Shown here: positions 16,797 to 39,658 of the stretch, piece by piece
Position numbering within the stretch: the first letter of the stretch is position 1
Layout: each line of letters opens with the position of its first letter
Assembly (NCBI RefSeq): GCF_001194135.2
Contig: NC_068987.1
Location: forward strand, 40,310,759-40,353,017
Direction of reading: 5' to 3'
DNA length: 42,259 nucleotides
Origin: Octopus bimaculoides
Lineage: Eukaryota
The notes under the pieces: generated by a model
What the model was told of the DNA's origin: nothing
Seen by the model: the letters and a program-made list of their open reading frames with translations, nothing else
Database searches by the model: none
Position numbers and translations under genes: made by a program

Positions 16797-16991
16797 ACAA
16801 GTACTATCATATTGCCAGCATTTAGATCAACACCTTGGTAGTTTGCTAGGAACAGAGCTGCTGTTACAATGAACAAAGCACTGCCACCCGCATTTAATGT
16901 CACTACTAGAGGTAGTGATACTCCGATCACCCGTTTATCAGCACCATTTCTCTCCACAAGACTAGATTCCATTTCTGGAAAGGCGGCAGAA
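16797..16991 (-). CDS. SLC1/EAAT-family transporter, internal coding exon (195 nt; HP1b-TM7-HP2a)
   Basis: Acceptor tattactttAG (16992-93), donor GTAAGT (16796-91), phase 2-2. Encodes (S)SAAFPEMESSLVERNGADKRVIGVSLPLVVTLNAGGSALFIVTAALFLANYQGVDLNAGNMIVL(V). Joined to the 29536 exon it rebuilds the TSSS HP1 motif. Confidence 0.9.
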
Positions 16992-17116
16992 CTAAAGTAA
17001 TAGAAAAAAATGAATAAATAAAAAGAGTTGTTGAAAATGAAAAATGATTTCTTTTGACTATTCAATGTTTAAACTAGTTATTTAAAGTTATTTTTAAATC
17101 CATTATACTATAGTTA

Positions 17117-17250
17117 TAGGTGCAGGTGTGGCTATAGATTAAGAATTTTACTTCCCAGCCACATGATTTTGGGTTCATTTTCACTACATGATACAGCCGA
17201 CAAAAGCTTTGTGAGTAGATTTAGTAGACGGAAACCGAAAGCCCATTGTA
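17117..17250 (+). mobile_element. Degenerate SINE head fragment
   Basis: ggtgcaggtgtggct..cttcccagccacatg..gggttca and agctttgtgagtagatttagtagacggaaaccgaaag match the SINE at 41471 with an internal deletion. Confidence 0.7.
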
Positions 17251-17531
17251 TATACGCATATATTCTTTTATGCATTTCAGCCCAAAGGGTGTGTTCATGC
17301 CAGAGCACCACCAGTATTAGAAAATTACCATTTTTAAATCTCACAACGTGAGATATTCAGCAACAGTACTTTGTAGTAAAGATTGCTTGCCAACATAACA
17401 TGGCAGTCCTGGTTTAGGACTAATGTTGCTGTAATTTAGCCCCAGGAGACATCGTCTCCAGCTGGCTATATGACATGATCTGTGTCCTTATATTTTCAAA
17501 CAAGGGAATCTAGCACTCCAACTCAGCTCAA

Positions 17532-17592
17532 AACAATATCTGTGTATCGCAATTTCTGGGTTATTTCCCTTCATCAGCACAGAATAATTGTT
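17532..17592 (-). ncRNA. Type I hammerhead ribozyme motif (family A, left arm)
   Basis: AACAAUUAUUCUGUG-CUGAUGA-A-GGG(AAAUAA)CCC-A-GAAA-U(UGCG)A-UA^CACAGAUAUUGUU: core intact, stem I 6 bp plus 6-bp extension, stem II 3 bp, stem III 2 bp, AUA triplet. No canonical G10.1-C11.1 pair. Confidence 0.72.
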
Positions 17593-17641
17593 TGAAAACT
17601 ATATATTTCGAATGGGAATTTGGCAGCACCACCTCTAACTG

Positions 17642-17702
17642 AACAATTATTCTGTGCTGATGAAGAGAAATAACCCAGAAATAACAATACTCAGATATTG
17701 TT
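17642..17702 (+). ncRNA. Type I hammerhead ribozyme motif (family A, right arm, more degenerate)
   Basis: CUGAUGA at 17657-63, GAAA at 17678-81, AUA at 17687-89. Mismatches in stem II (GAG/CCC) and stem I (CUCAG). Confidence 0.55.
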
Positions 17703-17859
17703 TTGAGCTGAGTGGGGGTGCTAGATTCCCTTGTTTGAAAATATAAGGACACAGATTGTGTCATATAGCCAGCTGGAGATGTCTCCTGGGGCTAAATTCC
17801 AGCAACATTAGTCCTAAACCACGACTGCTATGTTATGTTGGCAAACAATCTTTATTACA

Positions 17860-18060
17860 CCACCAGTGTTATCACCCTTTTCAATGGCCATTCTTATGTG
17901 ATTGACTTTTGGTGAAGGAGGGAGTTCAATATTGCTGTTTTCTTTTGAGTTTCTTGCTGCAATGTAAGTTTATCTGGGACCTTGTATAGGAGGAGGTCAA
18001 GTTGTTTCTTGAAAACATCTAGTTCCACTTCACATAGATCTCTCAGATGTTTGGCAAGGT
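17860..18060 (-). mobile_element. 3'-terminal fragment of a CR1/L2-group LINE
   Basis: Minus strand reads PKHLRDLCEVELDVFKKQLDLLLYKVPDK..ILNSLLHQ, resembling the FK-x-x-LD-x-FL-x-x-PD..NSL C-terminus of such LINEs. Recognised by motif only. Confidence 0.45.
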
Positions 18061-18233
18061 ATTAAATAGCCATGGGCCCTTGAATCCCAAACTATTGCAG
18101 TACATGTGATATATGTATATATATAAGATTCACTTGAATTAGGTACTTAAATTGAGGCACCAAGCCAGTCTGGTATAGTCTGCACAGCTCAAAGTTAGGT
18201 GAATAAAGAGCAAATAAGTAACAAGGATGTCCA

Positions 18234-20389
18234 GGTATCAATGCATCATGACTGTTTCAAGCAGCTCCATTTAATCTATCAATGAAAACATTACATCAAT
18301 TTGAAAGAAACCATTCTCCTCAGATGCAGACAACCATACAGATTTCCAATATAGAGGATAAATCATTGTTTTTAGCACAATTTACATCAGTTCTAAAATC
18401 TGAAATAATTACATTGTTTTCCTTTGCTATGTTTGTGGCAGAATGAACTTAGGGAAAAATGTATATCTAAAGCCTGCTATAATTTAGAGAGTAGTGGGAG
18501 GGGGTCAAGAAAAAGGAATGGTGAGATAGTTAATTTATATTTATCTTTATTATATTTATAAGATTTTATGCAGCATATAGTCTACAACCCTTTAGAGTTA
18601 AATCCATTGGGAGTTGACAGTTATGTTCCAGTTGATGGTAATAAATTAATTAATGTCAGATACCCTCCCCGGCCCTTATTTTACTGGGACTATATATCTA
18701 GCTTTATCTACATAAAAGGATATGTTTCAGAGTTGCTAGTAAGAGAATGACTGATGGAGAAGAGGTGATAACTAGAAGGAGGAAGGGTTACAAGGTGTAT
18801 CATAACTTAGCCAATTTGATATATCAAAAATTTAGAAAAGAATTTTAGAACAATATAATGGCAAAAGGATAGATAATTAAACTTAAACCTTAGAAATTGG
18901 GTACTTTAATACATAAGACAAAGTTCATAAGGCCTTTTCTAAGCATAAGCCAGTCCACTTATGCGTACCTTTCTTCATTGGACACTAAACTCCACTTGCA
19001 AAGACCTGTTGAGGCAAGTGAAATCGAAATCGAGTTTAAATTGGACACTAAACTCCACTTGCAAAGACCTGTTGAGGCAAGTGAAATCGAAATCAAGTTA
19101 AATTCGACGACTGGCACCCATGCCAATGTCGTCTCCTTCATTGGACACAAAACTCAGCTTGTGAAGACTTATTGGGGCAAGCGAAAGCGAAATCGTGATG
19201 GCACCTGTGCCCAGTGTCGCCTTTCTGGCACTTGTGCCTGCGGCATATATAAGGACATTCGAGCGAGATCGTTGCCAGTGCCCCTGGACTGGCTCTTGTG
19301 GCACATAAAATACACCATTTTNNNNNNNNNNNNNNNNNNNNNNNNNNNNNNNNNNNNNNNNNNNNNNNNNNNNNNNNNNNNNNNNNNNNNNNNNNNNNNN
19401 NNNNNNNNNNNNNNNNNNNNNNNNNNNNNNNNNNNNNNNNNNNNNNNNNNNNNNNNNNNNNNNNNNNNNNNNNNNNNNNNNNNNNNNNNNNNNNNNNNNN
19501 NNNNNNNNNNNNNNNNNNNNNNNNNNNNNNNNNNNNNNNNNNNNNNNNNNNNNNNNNNNNNNNNNNNNNNNNNNNNNNNNNNNNNNNNNNNNNNNNNNNN
19601 NNNNNNNNNNNNNNNNNNNNNNNNNNNNTGAGACCTAAATCTAAGGCCTCAGCCAGTCCACTTATGCGTACCTTCCTTCAGTGGACACTAAACTCCACTT
19701 GCGAAGACCTGTTGAGGCAAGTGAAATCGAAATCGAGTTAAATTCAACGACTGGCACCCATGCCAACGTCATCTCCTTCAGTGGACACGAAACTCAGCTT
19801 GCGAAGACTTATTGGGGCAAGCGAAAGCGAAATCGTGATGGCACCTATGGCCAGCGTCGCCTTTCTGGCACTTGTGCTTGCGGCATGTGTAAGGACTTTT
19901 GAGCGAGATCGTTGTCAGTGCCCCTGGACTGGCCTTCATGCCGGTGGCACGTAAAAGCACCCACTACACTCTCTGAGTGGTTGGTGTTAGGACGGGCATC
20001 CAGCTGTAGAAACTCTGCCAAATCAGATTGGAGCCTGGTATAGCCATCTGGTTTCACCAGTCCTCAGTCAAATCGTCCAACCCATGCTAGCATGGAAAGC
20101 GGACGTTAAACGACGACGATAATGATGATGATGATTGCTATTATAGTAGGCTTTGGATATACATTTTTCCCTAAATTCATTCTGTCACAAATATAGCAAA
20201 GGGAAACAATGTAATTATTTTGGTTTCTAGTACTGATGTAAATTGTGCTACAAAAAATGGTTTATCCTTTATATTGGAAATCTATGTGGTCATCTGCATC
20301 TGAATAGAGTGGTTTCTTTCAAATTGATGTAATGTTTTCATTGATCGATTAAATGGAGCCACTTGAAATGGCCATAATGCATTGATACC
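18234..20389. repeat. Inverted pair of a ~250-bp dispersed repeat (18234-18483 and 20140-20389)
   Basis: gtatcaatgc..ccatttaatc..aatgaaaacattacatcaatttgaaagaaacc..ctataat recurs as the reverse complement at 20140-20389. Confidence 0.85.
18945..20135 (+). mobile_element. Non-autonomous RTE-tailed retroelement; two partly overlapping copies either side of gap 19322-19628
   Basis: Shared gccagtccacttatgcgtacct..gagcgagatcgttg. The 3' end ccaacccatgctagcatggaaagcggacgttaaac(gat)n resembles the tail of the RTE LINE at 32306. The first copy has an extra 63-bp tandem unit (18978-19040 and 19041-19102). Confidence 0.75.
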
Positions 20390-22019
20390 CGTAATGCAGT
20401 CATATCCTCATTAGGGATTATATAATCCAAAGTATTACACTGGTTTAAATCCTATCATATAATGTGAAAGTCATTGGTATATGTTTGGGATTATTGAAAT
20501 TATCAATATTGGGGGAAAGCAAGAAGAAAATGGAGAAGAAATAGATGTAATTAATAATTTATTTGTATGTTACAAAAAGATGACAGTTTTTTTAAAAAAA
20601 CATAACAGTACAAATAAATTGAATTACATGTTGAAAGCTCAAAAAATAAATTAAAATAAAATAAAGAACTTACATATATGTTTCAGTTCTGTCATCTAGT
20701 TGATGGGAAGGAATTTTGAAGCATTTCGTTTAATGCTAAGAAAGTTACCATATTCTAACAATATGGTGGTAGGATGACTTCAAGGTTAATATAGAGCTCA
20801 TGGAAGTTAGGTAATCATTTTTTTTCTTTTGAAGGAAGTATAGAGTATTAGTAGGTTAAAAGTTAAAAGCTATATATTGAAAGTGTATTTGATTGATGGG
20901 TTTTATATATTTGTGAATATACTATGTACTATATGTTATAATTTGAAATAGATAAATAAAAATTAAAATCAAGCTAACGATAAAATAAAATAAAAATGAC
21001 TATTAAAACATTAAAACATAAAATAAAATAAAATAGACTAAAAATAAAACCTATGGATTATTCTTATTGGTTTAGTGAGAGATTCATATATGACATGATG
21101 ATGATGGAAGAAAATTTGAAAAATAACCGTTATAATGTGTATCGACCATTATTGATTAGGACATGTAGATACATATTTAAATGCAAATTTTAGATTAAAG
21201 CAATAGGCGGTTGGGACAATAGACATCAAATACATAGTGACTCATATATGTTTTATTGAGTATATGTGTGCACATAAATGTACATTAGAACTATTTAGTA
21301 TGAACACCAGTTTGAATATATAAATGCAAAAACAACTAAAACAGCTAAGAAATATATGCTATAGTGAGGAAGAAGAGTAAAAGAATATCAGATAAGGTTA
21401 TTGGATATAAATTCAAGTTCTAATAGGTATCGAATTTGCAGATAGAGTATTAAGTTTAGTAAATTAATGGTAGATATTTAAAGATTATTTACTATAAAGA
21501 AAAATATTTAATCATTTGATATGTGTAATGGGTATGATATTTAGATTCAAAATTAACAAAAGTGAGAAGGAAAGATAAGATGAAGAAAAACGGTGATTTA
21601 CTTTTTATATGAGTTATGGTCGGTGCGCAATGAGTTAGATATAAAATACAAAAATTTCTAGGTATAAATTCTAGATCTATTATGTATATAATTAATTGGG
21701 TTTGATATTAAGTAGATTATTAATGGTGGATATTAGGTCTAAAAATAAACAGGGGAAAATAGTGAATTCAGAGAGGTTAGTGGTATTTATAGAATAAATA
21801 TTTATGAGGATATTAAGATACAGAGGAACTATTTATGTTCACCGGGTTTTATATAAATAGAGGGTTTATAAATATAAATTCAGGATCCATTAGGTAGAGA
21901 AATCATTCATGGCCTATGCTCCACAGGGAGTGAAGGGCTTAAAGAATATATATATATATATGTATATATATGAATAATAACAATAAATGGAGCAAAACGC
22001 ATATAAATAAAAGTTCCTT

Positions 22020-22112
22020 TAATTCCTACGTATGTTTCAAAATATATGTGCAATCTACACCATAGAAGTAAGAGCTGCTGGAATTGCACATATATTCATC
22101 ATCAGGGAACCA
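22020..22112 (-). ncRNA. Type I hammerhead ribozyme motif (family B, left arm)
   Basis: UGGUUCC-CUGAUGA-UG-AAUAUAUGUGCAAU...AUUGCACAUAUAUU-UU-GAAAC(AUAC)GUA^GGAAUUA: 7-bp stem I, 14-bp stem II, GUA triplet. Confidence 0.8.
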
Positions 22113-22382
22113 GCATATAGAAGCAAGAAAAATGCGAAATGATAAGGTAACTTACGAGTTATAAATAATATTATATGGCCAAGTGGCAATGGATGCAGAA
22201 ATAGATATTATTTTACATTATATTAAAAGATATTATTCAGAGGACATTTGGTAAAAAAAAAACAATAATAATAATAAAAAAAGAAAATAATAATAATAAT
22301 AATAATAATACCTAAAACCTTAAACTAGTTGGAAGAATGGAATTAATGATAATAAATGAAGGTATGTCTCTGCCAGTGCTGA

Positions 22383-22970
22383 CATCGATACACTCTTTTA
22401 TTTTCCCCTTCTATAAGTAATTCCTTCCCAGTAATGCAACATTAGCTATCTCTGTACCACTAGTAACTTTAACTAGATATGCCCGATCTTCTTGTAAGCA
22501 TGTATATTGTTATTATTATTTCTCAACAAAATATTTTGTACCTTGTTCTACCATTGATTTGCGTTAACATCCGTATATTAATATATTACAAGGCAACGAT
22601 TTTTTTATTTATCATGTTTACATTCTTCGCTTCAAATCAGTATGTTATTAATTTTAATATCATCTTAAACAATATCTATTACTGCCTCCATCGACACTTG
22701 TCTTTTATTTTCCTCTTCTCTAGTTAGTTAAGTAATTTCTTCCTAGTAATGCTACATTGGCTGTGTTTGTACCATTAGTAACTTTAACTAAATATTCCCG
22801 AACTTCTCCTTGTAAGCTTGCATAATATTATTATTATTTCTCAACTAAATATCCTGTACCTTGTTTTACCATTAATTTGCGTTAATATCCATATATTAAT
22901 ATAATACATTACAAGGCTATAATGCTTTTTTTTAATATTTACATTCTTCGCTTTAAATTAGTATGTTACT
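22383..22970. repeat. Diverged tandem duplication, unit about 305 bp (22383-22650 and 22688-22970)
   Basis: aagtaatt(c/t)ctt..gtaatgc..tagtaactttaacta..cttgtaagc..tttctcaac..tgtaccttgtt..tttgcgttaa..tttacattcttcgctt occurs twice. Confidence 0.85.
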
Positions 22971-23279
22971 TTTTTTTTTCCTTAAGGAGAAATTTTTATA
23001 TATGATGAACTCTCTTGATTCTCTCCCTTCCTCCACATTTGGATTAGCTTATAGTTTATGACTTCAGTTTACTTTGCTGTGATCCATTCTTCCCCCCTCC
23101 CTCCTATTTTAATCATTTAATTTAAACCTTTAGTATAGCGTTTACAGCCCCCTTTCCGTTATAACTCTATGTAAACCAGCGTTCTTACTTCTAACGGTCA
23201 CTTACTTGGCCATATAATATTATAATATTATAACTCGTAAGTTACCTTATCATTTCGCATTTTTCTTGCTTCTATATGT

Positions 23280-23372
23280 TGGTTCCCTGACGATGAATAT
23301 ATGTGCAATTCCAGCAGCTCTTACTTCCTTGGAGTAGAGTGCACATATATTTTGAAACATATGTAGGAATTA
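23280..23372 (+). ncRNA. Type I hammerhead ribozyme motif (family B, right arm)
   Basis: Stem I uggttcc (23280-86) with ggaatta (23366-72); CUGACGA 23287-93; 12-bp stem II 23296-307 with 23340-351; GAAAC 23354-58; palindromic stem III ACAUAUGU; GUA 23363-65. Confidence 0.8.
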
Positions 23373-23703
23373 AAGGAACTTTTATTTATATGCATTTTGC
23401 TCCATTTATTGTTATTATTCATATCTACTCAAAATGCATTGCTTTAATTTGGTATCTCTACCTATAAAACNNNNNNNNNNNNNNNNNNNNNNNNNNNNNN
23501 NNNNNNNNNNNNNNNNNNNNNNNNNNNNNNNNNNNNNNNNNNNNNNNNNNNNNNNNNNNNNNNNNNNNNNNNNNNNNNNNNNNNNNNNNNNNNNNNNNNN
23601 NNNNNNNNNNNNNNNNNNNNNNNNNNNNNNNNNNNNNNNNNNNNNNNNNNNNNNNNNNNNNNNTATATATATATATATATATATATATTTAGAGAGAGAG
23701 AGA

Positions 23704-23784
23704 TGATAAGAAATGGGGCAATAATTAACAATAAGTGGATCATTGGTGTTTTAAAGTCATTATTTAATTAAAATAGGAGCATGT
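23704..23784 (-). repeat. Inverted copy of the sequence immediately downstream of the family C hammerhead (partner 24232-24315)
   Basis: ataagaaatggggcaataattaacaat..aagtggatcattggtgtt..aaagtcattatttaattaaaataggagcatgt is the reverse complement of 24232-24315. Confidence 0.85.
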
Positions 23785-24155
23785 ATTATTCCTTTACTTA
23801 GCCCATTGTACACACTGTATTGTACATACTTTAAATAATAACTTTAGCCTTACAGGGAGTAACTTAGAAGCTACAAATTAGTATTACATATGTTCAGTAA
23901 CAACACCGGATATCCCTAATAGCTGTAAGTCCTTCGGCTTACACCGCTGGTCAACTAGTCACCATTAGCACTGAATGTAGAAACCTACGTGGAATTATGA
24001 AAATAACTAAATATAAGATTATGGATTTAACAAACTCTCTTGTCTTTGATCCTCCTACTGACACATAGAATTATGTAAGTCATTAAAATGTAAGACTATT
24101 GAATTAATGAACATTTTCCCTTTCTTTTCCTTCTATTTTACCTTTCCCATATAAT

Positions 24156-24234
24156 CGTTCTGAAGATGTTTATCAATTGTAACAAGGTAAATGCAAATTT
24201 ACCCCATTTTGATAAATAGAAACAGCTGTAAACA
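24156..24234 (+). ncRNA. Type I hammerhead ribozyme motif (family C)
   Basis: CUGAAGA 24160-66; stem II UGUUUAUCAA/UUGAUAAAUA with an internal ggtaaat/atttacc hairpin; GAAAC 24219-23; palindromic stem III ACAGCUGU; GUA 24228-30. Stem I is only 3 bp (GUU/AAC). Confidence 0.68.
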
Positions 24235-24458
24235 TACTCCTATTTTAATTAAATAATGACTTTAGAACACCAATGATCCACTTCTCATTGTTAATTATTG
24301 CCCAATTTCTTATTGGCTCTATATCTATTAAACCATGGTTTACCTTTAAATTACCTACTACCGTATACCTTATAACAAGGACTATATATACTGAGGTAAT
24401 ACACCAGGAGTGCCTACGGATACACCTATCCCTCATTGGTTGCATAATTTCTATCTTA

Positions 24459-24461
<3 letters not shown>

Positions 24462-24523
<62 letters not shown>
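24462..24523. repeat. (TA)n microsatellite
   Basis: About 30 TA units. Confidence 0.95.
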
Positions 24524-24526
<3 letters not shown>

Positions 24527-24789
24527 ATATAGATATATTGTTATACTTGGTGATCGTCACATTTTGTCAATTAAACACATACACTATATATTTGGTTTTC
24601 ACTTCAGCTTTATAACTGAACAAGTAGCCCTTTAGTGTAACTTTGGTACTTGTGTGACCATTTTCCTCATCTGATCAAAGTAGTAGAATGGCCAGGGACC
24701 CCATAAATCCCTGGTCTGTAGAACATAATCATTTGAAAAAATCCCTGTGCAGATAACAACTGTAGAGTATGTAGACTAAATCTACAGAT

Positions 24790-25155
24790 AACTGTAAACC
24801 TAGGAATGCAGTTTTATAGTATAAGGTGTACCAAAGGATGCTGCAGAAACAGGACAATGACATACACTGGGGAGATAGTATGTAGTATAGGTGAGCAGAT
24901 AAGTGTACACTGGTGGGAGCTCAAGTAGGAAAAAGCTCATCAGTGCACTACAAACATGTTCAGTTAGAATATGGAAGCTTGGTTAATAACATAGATGTTA
25001 AGATATTATCAACACATAAAACAGACACGATACTCAAACAGATCATGGAGGCCACACACAGAATAGTAGATAGACTGAGCCTCAACAGAAACCATGAATG
25101 GAATACCCCCCCCCCCCCACACACACTCCATCATGCTATGCAACCTAATGACTAA
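24790..25155 (+). mobile_element. GIY-YIG endonuclease remnant of a Penelope-like element
   Basis: With frameshifts: NCKPRNA-VYSIRCTKGC..MTYTGE..I..H, then SSVHYKH..VKILS..KQIMEA..I..LSLNR. This matches the PLE pattern VY-x-I-x-C..YxGET..H..IL..E..I..LN. Confidence 0.65.
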
Positions 25156-26536
25156 AGGCAGAATGAGAAAAAAAAAGACATACAAAGACACACATACACA
25201 TACTAAAGACAGAAAAAGAAAAACAACAAAAATAAATAAATAAATAAATAAAAGACATAGGTACAGTGTAATGGGCAAACCCATATACATGCACACAAGA
25301 CATACATACTAAACACATAGACACACACACATATGCAGATAGGGATACATAACATAAAAATACAAAATGGAATCACCAGAACAAGAGGAAAGATGTGGGA
25401 TAGAGAGTTGTTGAAGAGGTCACATGAAAGAACTTTGACAAAGAAATTAAAATAACATTGTGTAACATGATATTTGTCTTTAGGTAACAACTGTTATATC
25501 CTTTTTGCTTACTCCTAGAAAGTATGGCTAATATTTCCTTCAAACTTTGCTTTGTTACATTTGTTCAAACTCCAAAGAATCCCTCTCAACACATGGCTAT
25601 GATGCTCCCCAACTACTCATGCTCATGATCAGAGATACATATATTGTCAGCCACTAAGGGACATGCTCAAGTGGTTAAGGTCAAACAAATGACAAGCAAA
25701 TCTGTGGTATTGAGCAGAATATTTGTTACAATGATATTTCTGCTTCAGCAACTCAGTGCTGAATCTGTCTGAAAATGGGTGAGTTTCAAAACATTGATGT
25801 CCAGTCAAAGTTCGATGGGAATAGTAGTCATTTCCTTTGATTTCTAGATGAAGCAAATAGGAAATAACACTTACTGACCAAAGAAAAAATTTTGTTACAT
25901 GGTGTAATAGTAATAAAATTGAAAGTATAATAATATCTGTTTCAACACATGATTTCACACTAAGAATCTTGTAAAACAAATACATAAATGTATATATATA
26001 GAAGTTTTTGTAAAAAAAAATAATAATTGATGCTGTCACAATGCTAAAAATAGATTTTCAGAAAGTTAATAACTATTTAAAAAAAATTTTGAAGCCTTGT
26101 GATTGAATTTGGTAGGCAGAAATTACCTTCATGTAAGTGCTTGTGTCTCCTAACAGCATGACACCTTAAGGAAAGAAGTTTTTGTATCGTGTATGTGTGT
26201 GTGCATGTGTGAATTATAAAACAATGGTTTTATTTGGATTTGAACCCATGAGCAGGAGTCAGATACCATATAAATTCAGCCATTTATAATATCATGGTTT
26301 TACTTTTTGTGTCCTTGAGCAAGGCAGTTCATTTCATGTTGGTGCAGTCTTCTCAACTGAAATGCATACCAGCAATAGCTGAGAGTGAGGTGGGAGGTTT
26401 AATCTTGTGGAGGACTGATAACTAATCTGGCAATCTGCCATGACTTGTACTCTCTGTTGCTTTGAAATTGAGGTCATCTCTGGCCAAATGAGCTGGTAGA
26501 CTTAATACAAACAAGATTTATAAAAAAGAGTTTATC

Positions 26537-26574
<38 letters not shown>

Positions 26575-26577
<3 letters not shown>

Positions 26578-26850
26578 TCATCATCATCATCATCATCGTT
26601 TAACGTCCGCTTTCCATGCTAGCATGGGTTGGACGATTTGACTGAGAACTGGTGAACCGGATGGCTGCACCAGGCTCCAATCTGATCTGGCAGACTTTCT
26701 ACAGTTGGATGCCCTTCCTAACGCCAACCACTCCAAGAGTGTAGTGGATGCTTTTACGTGCCATGCTCAAAATGGTGTTTTTTACGTGCCACCTGCACAG
26801 GAGCCAGTCCAGCGGCACTGGCAACGATCACACTCAAATGGTGCTGATTC
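26575..26850 (-). mobile_element. 3' part of the RTE-tailed non-autonomous element, with (CAT)n tail next to (TA)n
   Basis: Reverse complement of about 19900-20135 with high similarity. Confidence 0.85.
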
Positions 26851-27074
26851 ATTCAAAACAATGCAAATAAATAAGTATTACATTCGATGGAATCTGAATG
26901 TTAAAGGTTAAACACACAATTATAACAATCCACTGGGAATCAGATAAAGAAATAAACCTGGCAATGTTTAACTACCAAAGCCAAAAGCAAGCAGGGATAA
27001 CAACTACCAAATTCAGAATTAATTTCTTGACAGCATGTCATTATTTTTTTTTTTACTTAGTTTAATCATAAGAC

Positions 27075-27312
27075 TAGACATGCTGGAGCACCACCTTGAA
27101 ATGTTCAGTTGAACAAATCAACCTTAGTAATTTTTTTTATAAAGCCTGATATTTATTCTAGTTTTTTTTTTTTGCCAAATCACTAAGACATGGGTGCACA
27201 CACACACATCCTCAGTTTCTATCAACCAAATACTCTGGGGCATTTGCTGGCCTGGGGCTATATAGAAGAGACTTGTCCAAAGAACCACACAGTGAGATTG
27301 AACCCAAAACCA
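27075..27312 (-). mobile_element. Degenerate tRNA-type SINE
   Basis: catgctggagcaccacctt, ggggctata..agaagagacttgtccaa, attgaacccaaaacca match the SINE family at 11335 and 41471. Confidence 0.65.
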
Positions 27313-27747
27313 TTGGCGCTTGATGCAGTCTTCTGGACTGCCAGCTCCTGTCAAACTGTCCAAACCTTGCAAGCTGGGAAGATGGGCATTAAATGCTAAT
27401 AAGTAGACCATAATTCTTTACCCACAAAATNNNNNNNNNNNNNNNNNNNNNNNNNNNNNNNNNNNNNNNNNNNNNNNNNNNNNNNNNNNNNNNNNNNNNN
27501 NNNNNNNNNNNNNNNNNNNNNNNNNNNNNNNNNNNNNNNNNNNNNNNNNNNNNNNNNNNNNNNNNNNNNNNNNNNNNNNNNNNNNNNNNNNNNNNNNNNN
27601 NNNNNNNNNNNNNNNNNNNNNNNNNNNNNNNNNNNNNNNNNNNNNNNNNNNNNNNNNNNNNNNNNNNNNNNNNNNNNNNNNNNNNNNNNNNNNNNNNNNN
27701 NNNNNNNNNNNNNNNNNNNNNNNNNNNNNNNNNNNNNNNNNNNNNNN

Positions 27748-27750
27748 AGA

Positions 27751-27816
<66 letters not shown>

Positions 27817-27820
27817 GATA
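27748..27820. repeat. (GATA)n/(GACA)n microsatellite at a gap edge
   Basis: Read directly from the sequence. Confidence 0.95.
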
Positions 27821-29256
27821 GATCAAAATAGTTTGATTCAGGCTCCAGAGTTTCACGTGTGTGGCTAGTCTGAATGAGAGTTCAATTGAAGAGAGTCAAT
27901 GTTTACTACTGGATGTTAGCCTGCAATTGGTTGAGAAAGGTCATCTGGTATAGTGGTCTGATGTTGGTATTAAAATACTCTTCAACTCCCATAATGTCAA
28001 GCTAAGCTACTCCTGCTCAGACAACATTGCATGCATCAACAGATGTAAAAACGCCTGATACAACCCCTAACTCCAACTTGCAACATCCGGAACCCTACCA
28101 TCTGCCCCCTAGGAGGATCCTGCCTCTCAAGGGCTGTAGTATACAGAGCCACTCTTACGCCATCTGATGACATTGCTAGGTACTATACAGGCAGGACAGC
28201 CAATGACTTCAAGAGAAGATATTCCCAGCACTTGCATTCATTTAGATCCGGGGACAGAGACAACTCCACTTCCCTGTCATGCTTTCTCTGGAGACTTTGT
28301 GACCGCCGAGACAAAACACCCAGCATCAAGTGGACTATTACCATATTCACCCAACACCCCTAATTGTCAGCTGTGCCTCTGCGAACAACTGCATATCATC
28401 TACTAATCCACAGTATCCATCAACAAGAAATATGAGGTATTGTATTGCTGTCACCAGAGGTACATCCTTTTAGTAAATTTCAAGCCACTGGCCGCCAACA
28501 ACCTGGATATACCTCCTTAGTACCAACCATACATAGCACTGCCTGCACCAAGGTCACTGTCAGAAATTAACTCCCATGAACAGCACTGCAAATCACCAAT
28601 CCCCAACATTTCTCCATGCCTGTTTACCTGCATACTCTCACTCCTTGTACATCATCCCTTATGCATGACCACACAAGTATATGTGCATACACATGCATGT
28701 GAATGAGTGCATATATGCATCTGCTCGCCATATACATGTGCACGGATGTGTGTGCATGGGAATACACATGTGCACCCGCACATGTGCACATTTGAGTGTG
28801 CATGTCCTCATGTGCATATGTACATGGAATTAAAGGTGTGCATGCACATGTGTATGTATATGTGTGTGTGTCTGCATGAGTGCAGATGTATGAGTGTACA
28901 TCTCAGCACACATACACACTCGTATAAATATGGATGCATACATGCAGATATATGGAAATATACATGTACATATATACCCACACATCTACTTCTCACCAAC
29001 CACACAACCAACTTCTTGTCCACCACGCGGTCAATTTCCTGTTCACCATGCAGTATTTTCCAACTAATTGTTGTTGCTGAAATACCAACATCAAGCAGCT
29101 ATACCATGTGACCTTTCCCAATCAATCGCAGGAAATTGACCAGTAGTAAACATTGACTCTCTTCAATCGAGCTCTCATTCAGACTCCAATGGCCAAAGAC
29201 TAACCATATGATTGAAACTCAGAGTACCAAGGAGTCTGAATCAAACTGTTTTGATC
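27821..29256. repeat. Inverted repeat pair (27821-27943 and 29109-29256)
   Basis: ccagtagtaaacattgactctcttcaat..ctctcattcagact and ggag(c/t)ctgaatcaaact(a/g)ttttgatc occur in opposite orientations. Confidence 0.85.
28660..28985. repeat. Cryptically simple (CA/TG/TA)-rich alternating purine-pyrimidine tract
   Basis: tgcatacacatgcatgtg..gtgtatgtatatgtgtgtgtg..acatatatacc; decayed dinucleotide repeats. Confidence 0.8.
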
Positions 29257-29305
29257 TAAACATGTAACTCCCAATAAATGAATTGAGTGCCCTTCTTTCT
29301 ACTCA

Positions 29306-29356
<51 letters not shown>

Positions 29357-29535
29357 ATCATCATCATTTATGCATTTATATATATTATACACTTTGAAAT
29401 CTATCTGTATTTACCATACACAAATCTCTAGTTCTTATAAATTAAATGGTTACAACTAAAGAGGGTAGTTAAGTTGTTAACCTGGTTTATGTTATTTGCA
29501 AAGGTTCCATCAACAGTAATATTGTTTTAACTTAC

Positions 29536-29769
29536 CTGCTGGTGAAAGTAAATGCTAAAATATAAGGGCGTATGCAGGTGAAGAGGAACTTAAATGGGTT
29601 TTTCCGGAAAATAATAAGGTATATCAGATTTATGAAGACCAACATATGACAAGCCAGTCCAGTGAAAACAGTAAGGCTAAACATTCCAAGACTGGTGAAA
29701 AGTGTGTTGATGTCCTTAATACCTGCTATTGATGCCATTATCAAACTAGCGACGCCAATTGGAGTTATT
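29536..29769 (-). CDS. SLC1/EAAT-family transporter, internal coding exon (234 nt; TM5 end-TM6-HP1a)
   Basis: Acceptor ttttgttttgcAG (29770-71), donor GTAAG (29535-31), phase 2-2. Encodes (K)ITPIGVASLIMASIAGIKDINTLFTSLGMFSLTVFTGLACHMLVFINLIYLIIFRKNPFKFLFTCIRPYILAFTFTS(S). PIG and RKNPF are SLC1 hallmarks. Confidence 0.93.
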
Positions 29770-30129
29770 CTGCAAAACAAAATACACAGAGCTGCAAGAA
29801 CAATTTAAAAATCACTAATACTATGAAACCCTCTCTTAAGGAAACAAGTCTTCTCTTTTGTACAGGTGGTACACTGAGATGAGTATAATTGCAGGAGAGA
29901 TGATAAAAGCATCCAATGCTAAGTCATGGAAGGACTTAGGGGTTAAGCAGGACTAGCTTCAGATTGGCCAATAAAGAATTCTGCCAACTTTGTAACAAGG
30001 AGCTCTCATCCACATTTCCCATTGATAACTCAGCAGGGGTTCTTCTCTGTATACAGAAGAGTCTTCTGGGGAGGTGGAGAAAATACTAGAGAATGTATTC
30101 TCTAGCTGATCAGCATATGCTAAGTAACT

Positions 30130-31040
30130 CGAGCCATTGAAAAGACACCAAAGCAATCTAGGGGTGATAATCCCTATTTTTGAAAAGGGAAACAAGAAAG
30201 AGTGCTCCAGTTACTGAGCAATTTCCTTCTTGATCCTCTCTAGCTAGCTGTTTAGAAAAGAGGTGTAGGGAAATTGTTGAGCTCAAGCTAGCTGAAGAAC
30301 AGTGTGGCTCCCGTCCTGGACCTAGCATAGCCAACCAGATATTCACTCTATGGCAGGTGTTTCAGAAATCATGGGAGTATTACCAACAAGAATATGCTTG
30401 TTTTGTAGACCTTGAAAAGGCATATGACTATGTGGAGGGTTTTAAAGAAATTTGGGATTAATGGGCAATTTCTAATTACTATGTATTTACATAAATGCCA
30501 AGATATTTGTGTTTGGATTAATGGTGATGGGTTGAAACTTTTCAATGTGGATGCTGGACCTTGGCAGAGGAGTGCATTGTCACCTTTCTTTTTCATAATT
30601 TTTATGAAGTGGAAAGACATGCACAGCTGTTGTGGAAATGGAGTCACAATTGGTCAGTGTAGGATCAGTTGGCTGATATTTCCAGATGACATGGTGCTAC
30701 TTGACTCATCAGAAGATATTTTCCAGCATTTACTGAATGGGTTTACTGATGGATGCTGCAAGACAGAGATGAAAGTTAGTGTTGCTAAGACTGAGATTTC
30801 CCTGTATGTCAGTGGAAGATCACTGAGATAAGTGGAGAAGTTTAAGTATCTTGGGGCTGCATTTACAACTGATGGGCAGCAGAAGGCCTTATTGGAGGCT
30901 AAAATTGCATGTACTGGCACAGTTATGTGCAAGCTTCAGCATTTAGTCCTTAGGAGAGGAGAGGTTAGTAAAGGAATCCATCTTCAATTCAGTTTTTATA
31001 CCTATCTTCATGTACAGTTAAGAATGTTGGATAATAACTA
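30130..31040 (+). mobile_element. RTE-clade LINE RT fragment
   Basis: EEQCGSRPG..DLEKAY, SALSPFFFIIFM, LIFPDDMVLL, KVSVAKTE, EKFKYLG; many stops. Confidence 0.85.
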
Positions 31041-31476
31041 AGGCAATTTTTTCACAAAAAGTTGAAATTCATAAAAACATTCATTTCAAGGTTAAAACCA
31101 ATGATAAAAAAAACTTATTTTTTACTATTAATCATTGTAATTAATCAATTTTTAAAGTTAATAAAGTTAGAATCATGCAATAAACTTAAAATAAAGTTAA
31201 AAAATGAAATTTCACTAAAAAGAAAACTTTTTTTTTATTAGATACTGAAAAGAATAAATAAATTCATTAATATATATTTTCATGTAGTGATTAAACCTAA
31301 ATTTGATATGTATTTCTGCTAGTTTATAGAACTGTTGTATTGGACTAACTCTTCAGAGTTATTTTTAGCATTCCCTGTGGCTTGTCCTACCCTCTGATAT
31401 TAAAAATTATTTGACACCATGTATGTCCAACCTTTTGAACACAAACAAGTCTAGCATGTCAACAGACACATATACA

Positions 31477-31640
31477 TGATGGTTTTCTTTCAGCTTCTGT
31501 CTATCAAACCCACTCACAAGGCTTTGGTCAGTCTGAGGCTATAGTAGAAGACACCTGCCCAAGGTACCATGCAGTGGGTCTGAACCTGGAATCATGTAGT
31601 TGGGAAGCAAGCTTCTTCCTACACAGCCACACTTGTGCCA
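31477..31640 (-). mobile_element. SINE 5' half
   Basis: Reverse complement of the SINE head: ggcacaagtgtggctgtgtagg..cttcccaactacatgattccaggttcagaccc..ccttgggcagg. Confidence 0.85.
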
Positions 31641-31837
31641 ATATTATATCTTTTTATGTATCGTTTAAATTTTTATCTGAGTTTAATTGAACTGAATCAT
31701 TTTCTTTCATAGTTGCATTGCTAGATCTTTTTGAAGTTGATTGTGGAGTTCTTTTGTCATTGACTTATTGAGCTGCCTTTTTCCTGTTTCAAGTAATTTT
31801 AATTTTGATTATTGTGATTATCTTATTATTAACTCAG

Positions 31838-32300
31838 ATGGCAAAGCCAAAAACATGTCAGAAAGGAAAAGCTCTTGAATTTACAGAAAAATTCTCAAAA
31901 GAATTTGTTTTGTCTCGCAATAACCAGTGATACTGCAGACTGTGCTTTGTTAACTACCTTAAAAAGACTAGTAAAATTGAACAGTCACCTTTCAAATCAT
32001 TTGAATTTACTGAAAATGATAAACCTTGGGGTGCAATGGTGACTTAAGTGCTTCTTGAAGCTGGCATTTCTTTTCACAAGCTCACTAATCCAAGTTTGAG
32101 AAGTCTCTTTGATTCTATCAATACATCATTACAATCTCAATCTACATGCCAAAACTATGTTGATGGGCTTAATGCAAACACAGCTGAAAATTGCAAAAGC
32201 TGCTTGGCTGATCAAAATGTAATTCTAAATTGTTAATGAAAGTGAGATCAATGACAAAAAAATTCTTAATGTACTTATTTGTTCAGTTAAAAATCCCTAA
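31838..32300 (+). mobile_element. hAT-related (CGGBP1-like) transposase fragment
   Basis: MAKPK..YCRLC (zinc-finger-like), then LLEAGISFHKLTNPSLRSLF..SQSTCQNYVDGL..LADQNVIL, resembling the A-x-IP-x-x-KL-x-NP-x-LR..ST-x-R-x-YV motif of CGGBP-type proteins. Recognised by motif only. Confidence 0.55.
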
Positions 32301-32305
32301 TAAAC

Positions 32306-34680: not shown

Positions 34681-34933
34681 GTAAGGTAACCATTGTGAAT
34701 ATAAGCATTACAGCAACTGCAAATATAAATATAAATATGTCAAAGGAGGAACATAGTTTGGAAAGGAGAGAGGTATGTAAGTCTTCTGATGCAGAAGTGA
34801 GGCAGGGCTCTGTGGAAGTTTTTGGTATAAGGGAAGAGATTACTGGTATAAGAAAATGGATTTTCGGTATGGGAGGAGGGATTTCCAGTATTGGTGGTGG
34901 GGGCAGGAAAAGGTTGGTGCACCACAAACAAGA

Positions 34934-35513
34934 AATGGAAGAAAAGGTTAGCTTCGCCACAAGAAAATTGAAATAGCAGCAAAGGACAATAGTGAAGCAA
35001 AGAATGATAGAAACACATGAGAATTATGTCAAGTATTTAAAGGGATATGATTCTAGAAGTTATTAGAGAAAGTAACGAATTACAGGTTACAAAGTTATTT
35101 TAACTCAAGAACATTAGCATATGAGTAATACATGCTAAATGAATGAAAAGAATGATGAACAATTAAAATCTAGAGAAGTTTCTTAGCTTAGCAGCTGGAC
35201 ATTTCACGTCGTGATATGACGGTGTCAAATAGCAGGGCAAGATGAGAGGGTTTGAGAGAAACCATGTGCAAAGGGATTCTTTATATAATCTACAACTGGA
35301 AGTGGTCAAATAAGTGGCTGGCTTTGCTACAAGAAAATTGAAATAGCAGCAAAGGACAATACTGAATGGAAGAAATGGCTAACTTTGCCCCAAGAAAATC
35401 AAAATAGCAGCAAAGGAAAATAGTGAAGCAAAGAACAATAGAAACACATGAGAATTATGTCAAGTATTTAAAGGGATACAATTCTAGAAGTTATTAGAGA
35501 AAGTAACGAATTA
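34934..35513. repeat. Direct repeat of about 150 bp (34934-35082 and 35365-35513) plus a partial third unit (about 35318-35364)
   Basis: aagaaaat..aaatagcagcaaagga..atagtgaagcaaagaa..gaaacacatgagaattatgtcaagtatttaaagggata..ttctagaagttattagagaaagtaacgaatta occurs twice. Confidence 0.85.
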
Positions 35514-35570
35514 TGCCACTCAGATCAGCTCTAACTGTTGCAGTTGTAGTGACACTTTATAGCAGACGAC

Positions 35571-35813
35571 TGTTATATGTTCAATGTCCGGAGTTTTATC
35601 CACACATGCGCAGGGACTAGCTCCGGAAGGAATACAGGAAGAGTCTCATGCGCATGCATGGAGTTCGACACCCAGCTTTGGCGCCTTTTCTCAGTCTCTT
35701 CGTTGACTGATCTCCGTCAAGCCAAGACGTCCAACAGAGCTCTCTCACATGTCAGCACCAGAGCTTCACAAATAACCACGGAAATCATTCAGAAGGCGTC
35801 TCAGTAACCAAGG
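35571..35813 (+). mobile_element. Probable LTR 5' portion, truncated by a gap
   Basis: Starts TGTTATATGTTCA, like the Gypsy LTR start TGTTACATGTTCA at 7402. CpG-rich, with a catgcgcatgc motif like the solo LTR at 8482. Confidence 0.4.
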
Positions 35814-39410: not shown

Positions 39411-39531
39411 AGATGTAGACATGTTTGAAATTCAGTGTGTCTTCTAAGATAGAGAAAGTATTTGTCCCTGTTTAAGTTCTTCCAGTTATAAAGCACTGCA
39501 AGTGTGAAAGTAAAAGAGATAATTTACTTAC

Positions 39532-39658
39532 TTAAACAAATACTTAAATATTTCTGCTGTGATGAGACTGGTTGATTCAAAGAACATATGAAAAGGTTCT
39601 CCTTTTTCTTTCAAAGAACCAGCAACCATACCAAACAAAAAACTGAATGTAATAAGTC
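39532..39658 (-). CDS. SLC1/EAAT-family transporter, internal coding exon (127 nt; TM4c-TM5)
   Basis: Not in the ORF track. Acceptor attctatctttacAG (39659-60), donor GTAAGT (39531-26), phase 1-2. Encodes (G)LITFSFLFGMVAGSLKEKGEPFHMFFESTSLITAEIFKYLF(K) and splices in frame to the 29769 exon. Confidence 0.9.

What the first reader, a model, noticed from the sequence alone, without database searches (positions are those of the whole stretch)
16868..16894. SLC1 transporter with the catalytic NMDGT..YE motif replaced by NAGGS..FI
Seen: the exon reads TL-N-A-G-G-S-AL-F-I (AAT GCG GGT GGC AGT GCT TTG TTC ATT), while the frame, splice sites, HP1 TSSS, PIG and RKNPF are intact over about 185 codons. 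Established: in EAATs/GltPh the NMDGT motif (GltPh 310-314; EAAT3 366-370) provides Na+ ligands (N, D), the coupling Met and a substrate-contacting Thr; EAAT3 E374 is the proton/K+-coupling residue. Four or five key positions differ together. A-to-I editing cannot restore Met or Asp from GCG or GGT. Inference: a maintained but non-canonical paralogue, such as an uncoupled carrier, anion channel, sensor or regulatory subunit of the trimer.
Basis: partly seen in the sequence, partly recalled or inferred. Interest (0 to 1): 0.8.

Follow-up and report, generated by a model that had tools for sequence, protein, structure and literature searches.

The report
Octopus SLC1 transporter lacking sodium-site residues
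This is a real, selectively maintained octopus gene of the glutamate-transporter (SLC1) family, part of an old invertebrate branch that keeps the substrate-binding residues but has replaced the residues that normally bind sodium, protons and potassium, so it probably carries its cargo without the classical ion drive.

Summary
Window 16868-16894 on the minus strand reads N-A-G-G-S-A-L-F-I. It lies in a 195-nt exon, one of three phase-compatible SLC1 exons (185 codons) with AG/GTAAGT splice sites.

The gene is already annotated as Octopus bimaculoides "excitatory amino acid transporter 1-like" isoform X1 (XP_052825489.1, 512 aa).

It is not a pseudogene:
- NAGGS..FI is identical in O. sinensis and Argonauta hians, despite three synonymous changes inside the five motif codons.
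- dN/dS against Argonauta is 0.12, and 0.04 in the TM7 core.
- HP1, TM7, HP2 and TM8 are the most conserved segments.
- An AlphaFold model gives a complete SLC1 fold (TM-score 0.94 to ASCT2).

The motif loss is not peculiar to octopus. The gene sits in a 78-sequence clade (87% neighbour-joining bootstrap) of molluscs, tapeworms, nemerteans and one hemichordate.
- No clade member keeps Met311, Asp405, Ser/Thr93 or Glu374.
- Asp394, Arg397 and Asn401, which bind substrate, are almost always kept.
- The nearest relatives read NADGS..FI, so the octopod-specific step is a single Asp-to-Gly change.

The most likely function is an acidic amino-acid carrier uncoupled from the 3Na+/H+/K+ cycle. This is inferred, not shown. 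I found no description of the clade in the searchable literature.

The parts
16868..16894 (-). Codons for N-A-G-G-S-A-L-F-I, the position of the canonical NMDGT..YE motif at the unwound part of TM7. These are residues 361-369 of isoform X1.
   Evidence: Sequence read directly. Aligned to ASCT1 and EAAT2. Identical residues in O. sinensis and Argonauta, with 3 synonymous changes in the NAGGS codons.
16797..16991 (-). Exon B, 195 nt: second half of HP1 (SSAAFP), TM7a, the NAGGS motif and TM7b. Its length is a multiple of 3, so skipping it keeps the frame, as in RefSeq isoform X5.
   Evidence: Acceptor ctttag|TTCTGCC and donor CTTGT|gtaagt, both conserved in O. sinensis. tblastn of isoform X1 gives 100% identity.
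29536..29769 (-). Exon A, 234 nt: end of TM5, TM6 and the first half of HP1. It holds the PIG and RKNPF motifs and ends in FTFTS.
   Evidence: Acceptor ttttgcag|AATAACT and donor CAGCAG|gtaagt. An ENA metagenome contig (L001) holds a homologous exon with the same boundaries.
39532..39658 (-). Exon C, 127 nt: end of TM4 and TM5 of the scaffold domain (GLITFSFLFG...KYLF).
   Evidence: tblastn with EAAT1 and with isoform X1. Acceptor tttacag|GACTT and donor TTTAA|gtaagt.
16992..29535 (-). Intron between exons A and B, about 12.5 kb. It contains N gaps and repeats.
   Evidence: Colinear with the O. sinensis intron at about 87-91% identity.
29770..39531 (-). Intron between exons C and A, about 9.8 kb.
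   Evidence: Colinear with the O. sinensis contig L002.
1..16796 (-). Part of the intron downstream of exon B. The next exon (HP2 and TM8a, VLTAIVTMALPGVPSSS...) is not in the window. By colinearity with O. sinensis it lies roughly 2 kb beyond window position 1.
   Evidence: No tblastn hit for X1 residues 394-438 in the window. Window 1-933 aligns to L002 40611-41491, and that exon is at L002 43665-43799. Retrotransposon ORFs fill much of this stretch.

Best explanation
Shown. The window carries three internal exons of a functional Octopus bimaculoides SLC1 gene, RefSeq EAAT1-like isoform X1. The gene is held under purifying selection. It belongs to an old, mostly spiralian clade of SLC1 proteins.

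Inferred. The protein keeps the elevator fold and the side chains that hold an alpha-amino acid with an acidic side chain. These are Asp439 (GltPh D394), Arg442 (R397), Asn446 (N401), Ser365 (T314) and the HP1 serines.

It has lost most cation-coupling side chains:
- Na3/Na1 Asp312 is Gly.
- The Na2/coupling Met311 is Ala.
- Na1 Asp405 is His.
- Na3 Ser/Thr93 is Asn.
- The EAAT proton/K+ residue Glu374 is Ile, next to a Tyr-to-Phe change.

The most likely mechanism is a carrier that reaches its substrate-binding state without Na+ and without K+ counter-transport. That would make it a facilitative transporter or exchanger, or one coupled in another way, for example through the conserved His. 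This would parallel the route by which prokaryotic relatives first became Na+-independent and then lost their Na+ ligands. The fold, selection and residue pattern are shown. The substrate and the coupling mode are inferred.
For: - Gene and exons.
- Purifying selection: dN/dS is 0.116 against Argonauta over 187 codons (dS about 1.3, binomial p about 1e-18). The TM7 core has 16 synonymous and 4 non-synonymous differences. The NAGGS codons differ at 3 synonymous sites. dN/dS is 0.40 against O. sinensis (p=0.024), and exons are 95-97% identical against 82-93% for flanking introns.
- Conservation profile between Octopus and Argonauta: 69% overall, but 0.93-0.95 in HP1, TM7, HP2 and TM8.
- Fold: AlphaFold pLDDT 85, pTM 0.83, with the TM7 helix broken at residues 361-362. 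TM-score is 0.94 to ASCT2 and 0.91 to EAAT3.
- Clade: 78 sequences with NJ bootstrap 87.
- Residues lost in the clade: 0/78 keep M311, D405, S/T93 or E/Q374, against 86-96/100 of the other sequences.
- Residues kept in the clade: D394 78/78, R397 77/78, N401 67/78.
- Published framework: the list of Na+-site residues, the finding that uncoupling precedes loss of Na+ ligands, and the substrate roles of T314, D394, R397 and N401 all come from PMC12668577.
- Expression of clade members: Logan contigs of 1.6-2.2 kb encode full-length proteins of 480-510 aa and so are intronless transcripts.
Against: - There is no functional datum for any member of the clade.
- Na+ sites are built partly from backbone carbonyls. 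Asn361 (N310) and Ser110 (T92) remain, and Asn111 and His450 could in principle supply ligands, so some cation dependence cannot be excluded from sequence.
- I could not examine transcript evidence for this octopus gene directly. I have only the RefSeq models, which include several exon-skipped or truncated isoforms.
- The tree is neighbour-joining on 381 columns. Support for the inner 34-sequence clade is weak (bootstrap 35).
- dN/dS of 0.40 against O. sinensis is only mildly below 1 and rests on 26 substitutions.
Confidence: 0.5

Rival explanations
1. It is still a Na+-coupled concentrative amino-acid transporter. Replacement ligands (Asn at position 93, His at 405, backbone carbonyls, water) rebuild one or two Na+ sites, giving a lower Na+ stoichiometry that is tolerable in seawater-strength Na+.
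For: - N310 and the position-92 hydroxyl are kept in octopods.
- Asn is nearly universal at position 93 in the clade (62/78), and His at 405 is common (42/78). These are specific conserved replacements, not random decay.
- The substrate site is intact.
Against: - Both acidic Na+ ligands (D312, D405) and Met311 are gone in octopods.
- Elsewhere in the clade N310 itself is replaced in 47/78 sequences.
- The literature reports that mutations at all three Na+ sites diminish Na+-coupled binding and transport (PMC12668577).
Confidence: 0.2
2. It no longer performs net transport. It works as a ligand-gated or constitutive anion channel, or as an amino-acid sensor, in the way EAAT4 and EAAT5 are mainly chloride conductances.
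For: - The Arg that sets anion selectivity in EAAT1 (R477; PMC4924932) is kept in octopus (R440) and in 76/78 clade members.
- The substrate-binding residues are kept, so ligand gating is possible.
- The loss of coupling residues is compatible with a non-cycling protein.
Against: - The anion pathway opens during elevator movement, so a channel-only role does not explain the wholesale replacement of cation ligands.
- HP2, the gate, is strongly conserved within the clade in a new consensus (AxPxVPSxS), which suggests a working gate.
- There is no direct evidence either way.
Confidence: 0.15
3. It is a transport-dead subunit that joins trimers with canonical EAATs and modulates them, acting as a regulatory or dominant-negative subunit.
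For: - SLC1 proteins are obligate trimers, and the scaffold helices are present.
- Many predicted isoforms lack parts of the transport domain.
Against: - Conservation is highest in the ligand-binding elements of the transport domain, not in the scaffold.
- Identity to canonical EAATs is only about 30-34%, which makes mixed trimers unlikely.
- The clade has many paralogues per species and could form its own trimers.
Confidence: 0.05
4. It is a decaying or non-functional paralogue, a pseudogene in the making, and the motif loss is simply damage.
For: - Several RefSeq isoforms are truncated or skip exons, including the NAGGS exon.
- dN/dS against the close relative O. sinensis is a moderate 0.40.
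Against: - A full-length ORF is present in Octopus bimaculoides and Argonauta, and the partial O. sinensis model agrees.
- dN/dS is 0.12 against Argonauta, with p about 1e-18.
- The motif is preserved through synonymous substitutions.
- Splice sites are conserved.
Confidence: 0.02

Closest known systems
EAAT1-5 (SLC1A1, 2, 3, 6, 7): 3Na+/H+ symport, K+ antiport glutamate transporters
   Same: - Same fold and domain order (PF00375; TM-score up to 0.91 to EAAT3).
- HP1 serine motif.
- The TM8 residues D444, R447 and N451 that bind an acidic amino acid.
- The Arg equivalent to EAAT1 R477.
   Different: - NMDGT is NAGGS.
- Y373-E374 is F-I.
- Na1 D455 is His.
- TM3 Thr/Ser is Asn.
- D440 is Glu.
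- HP2 GAAGIPQAGLV is ALPGVPSSSIV.
- About 33% identity overall.
ASCT1/2 (SLC1A4, SLC1A5): Na+-dependent neutral amino-acid exchangers
   Same: - Best sequence and structure matches: E=6e-26 to ASCT1 and TM-score 0.94 to ASCT2.
- Like the ASCTs it lacks the Glu374 carboxylate and has Phe for Tyr373. In ASCTs these features go with the absence of K+ coupling and with obligate exchange (my recollection, not checked here).
   Different: - ASCTs keep N-M-D-G and the Na1 Asp and remain Na+-dependent.
- ASCTs replace Arg447 with Thr or Cys (neutral substrates), whereas the octopus protein keeps Arg.
Prokaryotic H+-coupled and uncoupled glutamate-transporter homologues (ExtH clade and ancestral AncInt; Reddy et al. 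2025, PMC12668577)
   Same: - A lineage of the same family that gave up Na+ coupling and afterwards lost Na+-ligand side chains at positions 92, 311 and 405, while keeping T314, D394, R397 and N401.
- Positions 311 and 405 are also hit here, and the neighbouring position 93 is hit instead of 92.
   Different: - The replacements differ: hydrophobic-92, L311 and N405 in bacteria, against N93, A or R at 311 and H405 here.
- Bacteria keep D312 and N310, which vary in this clade.
- This is an independent event in animals.
Mosquito CuqDCT/AeaDCT (SLC1 dicarboxylate transporters; Wang et al. 2013, PMC3737229)
   Same: An invertebrate SLC1 paralogue whose function changed through a few substitutions at otherwise strictly conserved sites. 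It also lost K+ counter-transport.
   Different: - CuqDCT changes the substrate residues (D444N, T448A) and keeps the cation sites.
- The octopus protein does the reverse: D444 and R447 are kept and the cation sites are changed.
Arthropod SLC1 group in ticks and Danaus, annotated 'glt-6-like': the sister group in my tree
   Same: - Shares F-[I/V/L] in place of Y-E.
- Shares Glu for D440 in most members.
- Shares an HP2 with VPS[AS].
   Different: - It keeps N-M-[D/N]-G-T, Ser at position 93 and the Na1 Asp (GD).
- It has not been functionally characterised, as far as I could find.

Membership tests
SLC1 / DAACS superfamily (Pfam PF00375, SDF) | Significant match to the SDF profile | tested here: met
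   E=5e-26, 92 bits against a cut-off of 27.9, for the 143 aa of exons A and B. 45 PDB SLC1 chains match at E<=1e-3.
SLC1 / DAACS superfamily (Pfam PF00375, SDF) | Complete fold of 8 TM helices plus 2 hairpins, with TM7 unwound at the motif | tested here: met
   AlphaFold model of isoform X1: pLDDT 85.2, pTM 0.83, helix break at residues 361-362. Foldseek TM-score 0.94 to ASCT2 8oui_B and 0.91 to EAAT3 9p4x.
SLC1 / DAACS superfamily (Pfam PF00375, SDF) | Serine-rich HP1 tip | tested here: met
   T-S-S-S spans the exon A/B junction.
SLC1 / DAACS superfamily (Pfam PF00375, SDF) | N-M-D-G-T/A/S motif in TM7 | tested here: not met
   The sequence is NAGGS. Of 100 non-clade sequences, 98 have N310, 95 have M311 and 83 have D312 with 11 more Asn.
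Na+-coupled glutamate transporters (criteria of Reddy et al. 2025: [S/T]92-93, N310, [M/S]311, [D/E]312, [D/E]405) | All Na+-site side chains present | tested here: not met
   Octopus has S92, N93, N310, A311, G312 and H405, so four of six fail (criteria).
EAAT subfamily (H+/K+-coupled) | Glu374 (EAAT3 numbering) with Tyr373 | tested here: not met
   The residues are Phe368-Ile369. 0/78 clade members have Glu or Gln, against 92/100 of the others.
EAAT subfamily (H+/K+-coupled) | Acidic amino-acid recognition residues D444, R447, T448 and N451 | tested here: met
   D439, R442, S443 (a conservative change) and N446 in X1. These residues lie outside the window and were read from the RefSeq, O. 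sinensis and Argonauta sequences.
EAAT subfamily (H+/K+-coupled) | Na+-dependent, K+-coupled glutamate uptake | not testable with these tools
   This needs heterologous expression and flux or current measurements.
ASCT subfamily | Arg447 replaced by Thr or Cys, NMDGA motif and Gln at position 374 | tested here: not met
   Arg is kept, the motif is NAGGS and position 374 is Ile.
Divergent, mostly spiralian SLC1 clade (defined here) | Signature of Asn93, non-Met311, Ser314, [F/Y]-[I/L/M/V] at 317-318, HP2 AxPxxPSxS, Glu390 and non-Asp405, together with placement in the clade on a tree | tested here: met
   Every signature position is matched. Octopus and Argonauta fall inside the 78-sequence clade with NJ bootstrap 87.

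The most novel reading that the evidence does not exclude
Animals have a whole, previously unrecognised branch of SLC1 transporters, in molluscs, tapeworms, nemerteans and at least one hemichordate, that abandoned the universal 3Na+ coupling machinery while keeping the acidic amino-acid binding site. In this branch protein side chains (His at the Na1 Asp position, Asn at the Na3 Ser/Thr position, and Arg at the Met311 position in half the members) take the place of bound Na+ ions. The result would be Na+-independent, perhaps H+-coupled or facilitative, amino-acid carriers. The octopod gene is the most stripped-down form, having also lost Asp312.
Probability: 0.4. Interest if true: 0.75.

Novelty: new variant of a known kind. 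Interest (0 to 1): 0.6.

Why it matters
The NMDGT motif and the Na1 aspartate are treated as near-universal hallmarks of glutamate-transporter homologues from archaea to humans. How ion coupling is built into the elevator mechanism is still an open question.

A natural animal clade offers an evolutionary experiment on that question. It is under strong purifying selection, its substrate site is preserved, and every acidic or sulphur cation ligand has been swapped. It is comparable to the prokaryotic Na+-to-H+ transition analysed by ancestral reconstruction.

Members could be tested directly for Na+-independent transport, and reverse mutations could test which residues are sufficient for coupling.

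There is also a practical point for annotation. Dozens of mollusc, flatworm and nemertean proteins labelled "excitatory amino acid transporter" or "sodium-dependent ... glt-6" are unlikely to be Na+/K+-coupled glutamate transporters. They should not be used uncritically as glial or glutamatergic markers.

Tried and rejected
- The first word-indexed homologue search, with 143 aa, returned a single 100-aa metagenome fragment. The sequence shares too few 5-mers with canonical SLC1 proteins. The exhaustive HMMER search and a search with the full-length protein were needed.
- I looked for the HP2/TM8 exon in window 1-16796 and found none. Colinearity with O. sinensis places it about 2 kb beyond the window. 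It is not deleted.
- Pseudogene hypothesis: rejected.
- Sequencing or assembly error at the motif: rejected, because three species agree.
- A-to-I recoding restoring Met or Asp: impossible, because the GCG and GGT codons contain no A.
- Literature searches for NMDGT with invertebrates, SLC1 phylogeny, ApGT2, mollusc SLC1 expansion, Lophotrochozoa EAAT and flatworm or nemertean SLC1 found no description of this clade. The mollusc terrestrialisation paper does not mention SLC1. The oyster GLT paper lists only three CgEAATs.
- I recalled that Aplysia ApGT2 might be a non-transporting relative but could not verify it, so I dropped it.
- No decapodiform (squid or cuttlefish) or Nautilus orthologue turned up in the protein collections, so the Asp-to-Gly change cannot be dated more finely than before the Octopus-Argonauta split.
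- Pfam found nothing at E<=0.001 for a mariner-like ORF at 15378-15599 or for several other repeat ORFs.

Full report
**1. Observation**

The window is AT-rich and carries seven N gaps. The finding lies on the minus strand. The reverse complement of 16868-16894 is AAT GCG GGT GGC AGT GCT TTG TTC ATT, which reads NAGGSALFI.

The surrounding open stretch is bounded by ctttag|TTCTGCC and CTTGT|gtaagt. Two further SLC1 exons lie upstream on the same strand. One I found by motif (PIG, RKNPF).

Exact limits are:
- Exon C: 39532-39658
- Exon A: 29536-29769
- Exon B: 16797-16991

The phases fit.

The A and B peptide hits Pfam SDF at 5e-26. It aligns without gaps to ASCT1 and EAAT2, with NAGGS..FI lying on NMDG[A/T]..[F/Y][Q/E].

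**2. Identity of the gene**

An exhaustive HMMER search of 1.84 billion representative proteins gave two near-identical hits. Cluster look-ups named them:
- Octopus bimaculoides "excitatory amino acid transporter 1-like".
- O. sinensis "neutral amino acid transporter A-like, partial" (92% identical).

Inserting exon B into isoform X5 reproduces isoform X1 exactly (XP_052825489.1, 512 aa). The window is therefore O. bimaculoides or something indistinguishable from it.

RefSeq lists eight isoforms:
- X3 skips the TM3 exon.
- X5 skips exon B, which is in-frame at 195 nt.
- X7 skips exon A.
- X2, X4, X6 and X8 are truncated.

A third orthologue comes from the argonaut Argonauta hians (518 aa, 69% identical).

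The window is colinear with the O. sinensis contig across the introns at 87-93% identity. That colinearity places the next exon (HP2 and TM8a) about 2 kb beyond window position 1. This explains why no TM8 exon is present in the window.

**3. Is it maintained?**

All six splice sites are identical or nearly identical in O. sinensis. Exons are 95-97% identical, against 82-93% for 300-bp intron flanks.

Nei-Gojobori dN/dS values:

| Comparison | Codons | dN/dS | Note |
|---|---|---|---|
| O. bimaculoides vs O. sinensis | 187 | 0.40 | 11 synonymous, 15 non-synonymous; p=0.024 |
| O. bimaculoides vs Argonauta | 187 | 0.116 | dS about 1.3; p about 1e-18 |
| TM7 core, vs Argonauta | 27 | 0.04 | 16 synonymous, 4 non-synonymous |

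The five motif codons are AAT GCG GGT GGC AGT in Octopus and AAT GCT GGA GGA AGT in Argonauta. That is three synonymous changes and no amino-acid change.

In a sliding window along the protein, identity between Octopus and Argonauta peaks at 0.93-0.95 in HP1, TM7, HP2 and TM8. These are the elements that form the ligand site.

An AlphaFold2 model of X1, built on a 68-sequence alignment, has pLDDT 85 and pTM 0.83. TM7 is broken at residues 361-362, as it is at the canonical NMD. The model superposes on inward-facing ASCT2 (TM-score 0.94) and EAAT3 (0.91).

The pseudogene reading is rejected.

**4. The motif loss is a clade property**

I aligned the 150 HMMER representatives and the 120 word-search hits. 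Many mollusc proteins share a distinct signature:
- HP1: FAxxSxAxAIP
- TM7: a variable motif (NADGS, NRDGS, SANGS, QADGS, GRCGS, ERLGS, CRCGS, MRGGS and others), followed by [F/Y][I/L/M/V]
- HP2: AxPxVPSxSxV
- TM8: EWxLDRxR[S/T]xxNxxSH

A neighbour-joining tree of 197 sequences on 381 columns, with 100 bootstraps, gave the following:
- Octopus and Argonauta group together at 100%.
- They sit inside a 34-sequence group (bootstrap only 35) whose mollusc members read NADGS, HADGS, QADGS or SANGS.
- All of these sit inside a 78-sequence clade with bootstrap 87.
- The sister group (bootstrap 69) is arthropod (ticks, Danaus). It keeps NM[D/N]GT and the Na1 Asp but already has F-[I/V/L].

Named members come from bivalves, gastropods, a chiton, octopods, cestodes, nemerteans and the hemichordate Ptychodera flava.

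Several members sit on 1.6-2.2 kb Logan contigs that encode the full protein. These are spliced transcripts.

**5. Site-by-site pattern (numbering GltPh/EAAT3)**

| Position | Role | 78-sequence clade | 100 other sequences |
|---|---|---|---|
| M311 | Na2 and coupling | 0/78 Met (Arg 41, Ala 26) | 95 |
| D405/455 | Na1 | 0/78 Asp (His 42, Gln 14) | 96 |
| S/T93 | Na3 | 0/78 (Asn 62) | 86 |
| E374/Q318 | H+/K+ in EAATs | 0/78 (Ile 64) | 92 |
| N310 | Na1 and Na3 | 31/78 | 98 |
| D312 | Na3 | 42/78 | 83 (plus 11 Asn) |
| D394/444 | substrate | 78/78 | 94 |
| R397/447 | substrate | 77/78 | 87 |
| N401/451 | substrate | 67/78 | 98 |
| G313 | motif | 74/78 | 100 |
| T314 | substrate | Ser in 72/78 | Thr 83 |
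| EAAT1 R477 | anion selectivity | 76/78 | 75 |

Octopus X1 reads S110, N111, N361, A362, G363, G364, S365, F368, I369, E435, D439, R440, R442, S443, N446 and H450.

Against its nearest relatives (NADGS..FI), the octopod-specific change is a single Asp-to-Gly (GAY to GGY). It occurred before the Octopus-Argonauta split.

**6. Mechanistic reading**

Reddy et al. 2025 (PMC12668577) give three relevant points:
- They define the Na+-site residues as [S/T]92-93, N310, [M/S]311, [D/E]312 and [D/E]405.
- They show that T314, D394, R397 and N401 hold aspartate.
- They show that in Firmicutes the family first became Na+-independent through allosteric changes and only afterwards lost Na+ ligands (hydrophobic-92, L311, N405).

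The octopus protein fails four of the six Na+-site criteria and passes all the substrate criteria. The animal clade looks like an independent replay of that trajectory.

Wang et al. [quoted passage not shown] They find D440, R447, N451 and D455 present even in those DCTs. Here D440 is Glu and D455 is His, which shows how unusual the clade is.

From my own knowledge, not verified here: Tyr403Phe and Glu404 mutants of GLT-1, and Glu373Gln of EAAC1, lose K+-dependent relocation and become exchangers. The F-I pair therefore argues against a K+-coupled cycle.

My best explanation is a carrier for an acidic amino acid or a similar carboxylate that is not driven by 3Na+/H+/K+. That means a facilitative carrier, an exchanger, or one coupled otherwise (confidence about 0.5).

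Residual Na+ dependence through substitute ligands is possible (0.2). So is a channel or sensor role (0.15). The anion-selectivity Arg of EAAT1 (Cater et al. 2016, PMC4924932) is retained. A regulatory-subunit role is unlikely, because the transport-domain core is the most conserved part, not the scaffold.

**7. Novelty**

The gene itself is annotated, under a name that implies canonical function.

I found no paper that describes the clade or its loss of cation ligands. An oyster study counts only three EAATs. My searches, in contrast, return several additional oyster paralogues of this clade.

I classify the finding as a new variant of a known kind.

**Limits**
- The tree is neighbour-joining only.
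- Taxon names are known for only part of the clade.
- There are no expression data for the octopus gene beyond the RefSeq models.
- There are no functional data for any member of the clade.

Noticed in passing
Outside the window: RefSeq isoforms of the same gene (P0272, P0270, P0154, P0269, P0003, P0271, P0155, P0268): Eight predicted isoforms exist and only X1 is a complete transporter. X5 skips the NAGGS exon precisely and in frame (195 nt). X7 skips exon A and X3 skips the TM3 exon. X2, X4, X6 and X8 read into introns and truncate before or within TM8. This could be regulated unproductive splicing or noise from a weakly expressed gene.
   Followed up: partly
L001 1-641 (ENA metagenome scaffold WANG22-1_SAMN08714533): This contig holds a eukaryotic exon homologous to exon A (45% identity, same exon boundaries). 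Two tandem partial copies of about 120 bp precede it. Each copy repeats the acceptor site and the first 55 nt or so of the exon. This looks like host (probably invertebrate) DNA in a metagenome, with a local exon-start duplication.
   Followed up: no
window 7500-10551 (-): LTR-retrotransposon pol remnant inside the intron, with reverse transcriptase, RNase H and integrase zinc-binding domains (Pfam RVT_1, RT_RNaseH, Integrase_H2C2).
   Followed up: partly
window 2-1505 (-) and 5379-6992 (-): LINE-like reverse transcriptase fragments, in two related copies. At 2-1505, Pfam zf-RVT passes its cut-off (E=3e-8) and RVT_1 is weak (E=8e-4, below its cut-off). At 5379-6992, Pfam found nothing at E<=0.001 for the 6431-6992 part, and the assignment rests on visible similarity to the first copy. 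The second copy is interrupted by the N gap at 5587-6430.
   Followed up: partly
window 15378-16065 (-): ORF fragments such as ...FHQDNARPHT...PYSPDIAPFDYHLF... look to me like a mariner/Tc1 transposase remnant. Pfam gave no hit at E<=0.001 for the 74-aa piece, so this rests on recollection only.
   Followed up: partly
Related proteins (alignment), position equivalent to window codon GCG (16889-16891): In 41 of 78 clade members the Met311 position is Arg (NRDGS, GRCGS, ERLGS and others). An Arg at the junction of the Na+ sites could act as a tethered cation that replaces a bound Na+. Octopods have Ala instead.
   Followed up: no
P0106 (Ptychodera flava, hemichordate): A deuterostome protein carries the full clade signature (KADGS..FI, SLPSVPSAS, EW...SH) and falls inside the 78-sequence clade. 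The clade may therefore predate the protostome-deuterostome split and have been lost in vertebrates.
   Followed up: no
P0157 (Culicoides sonorensis, 821 aa): This insect gene model holds two tandem SLC1 units. One reads SNTPGVG and the other SNMDGS at the motif, and both have the HP2 VPSS signature. It is either a fused tandem pair or a mis-merged annotation.
   Followed up: no
window 5587-6430, 13776-14193, 19322-19628, 23471-23663, 27431-27747, 35814-36143, 37807-37816: Seven runs of N (assembly gaps) lie within the introns, several of them flanked by simple repeats. None touches an exon.
   Followed up: yes
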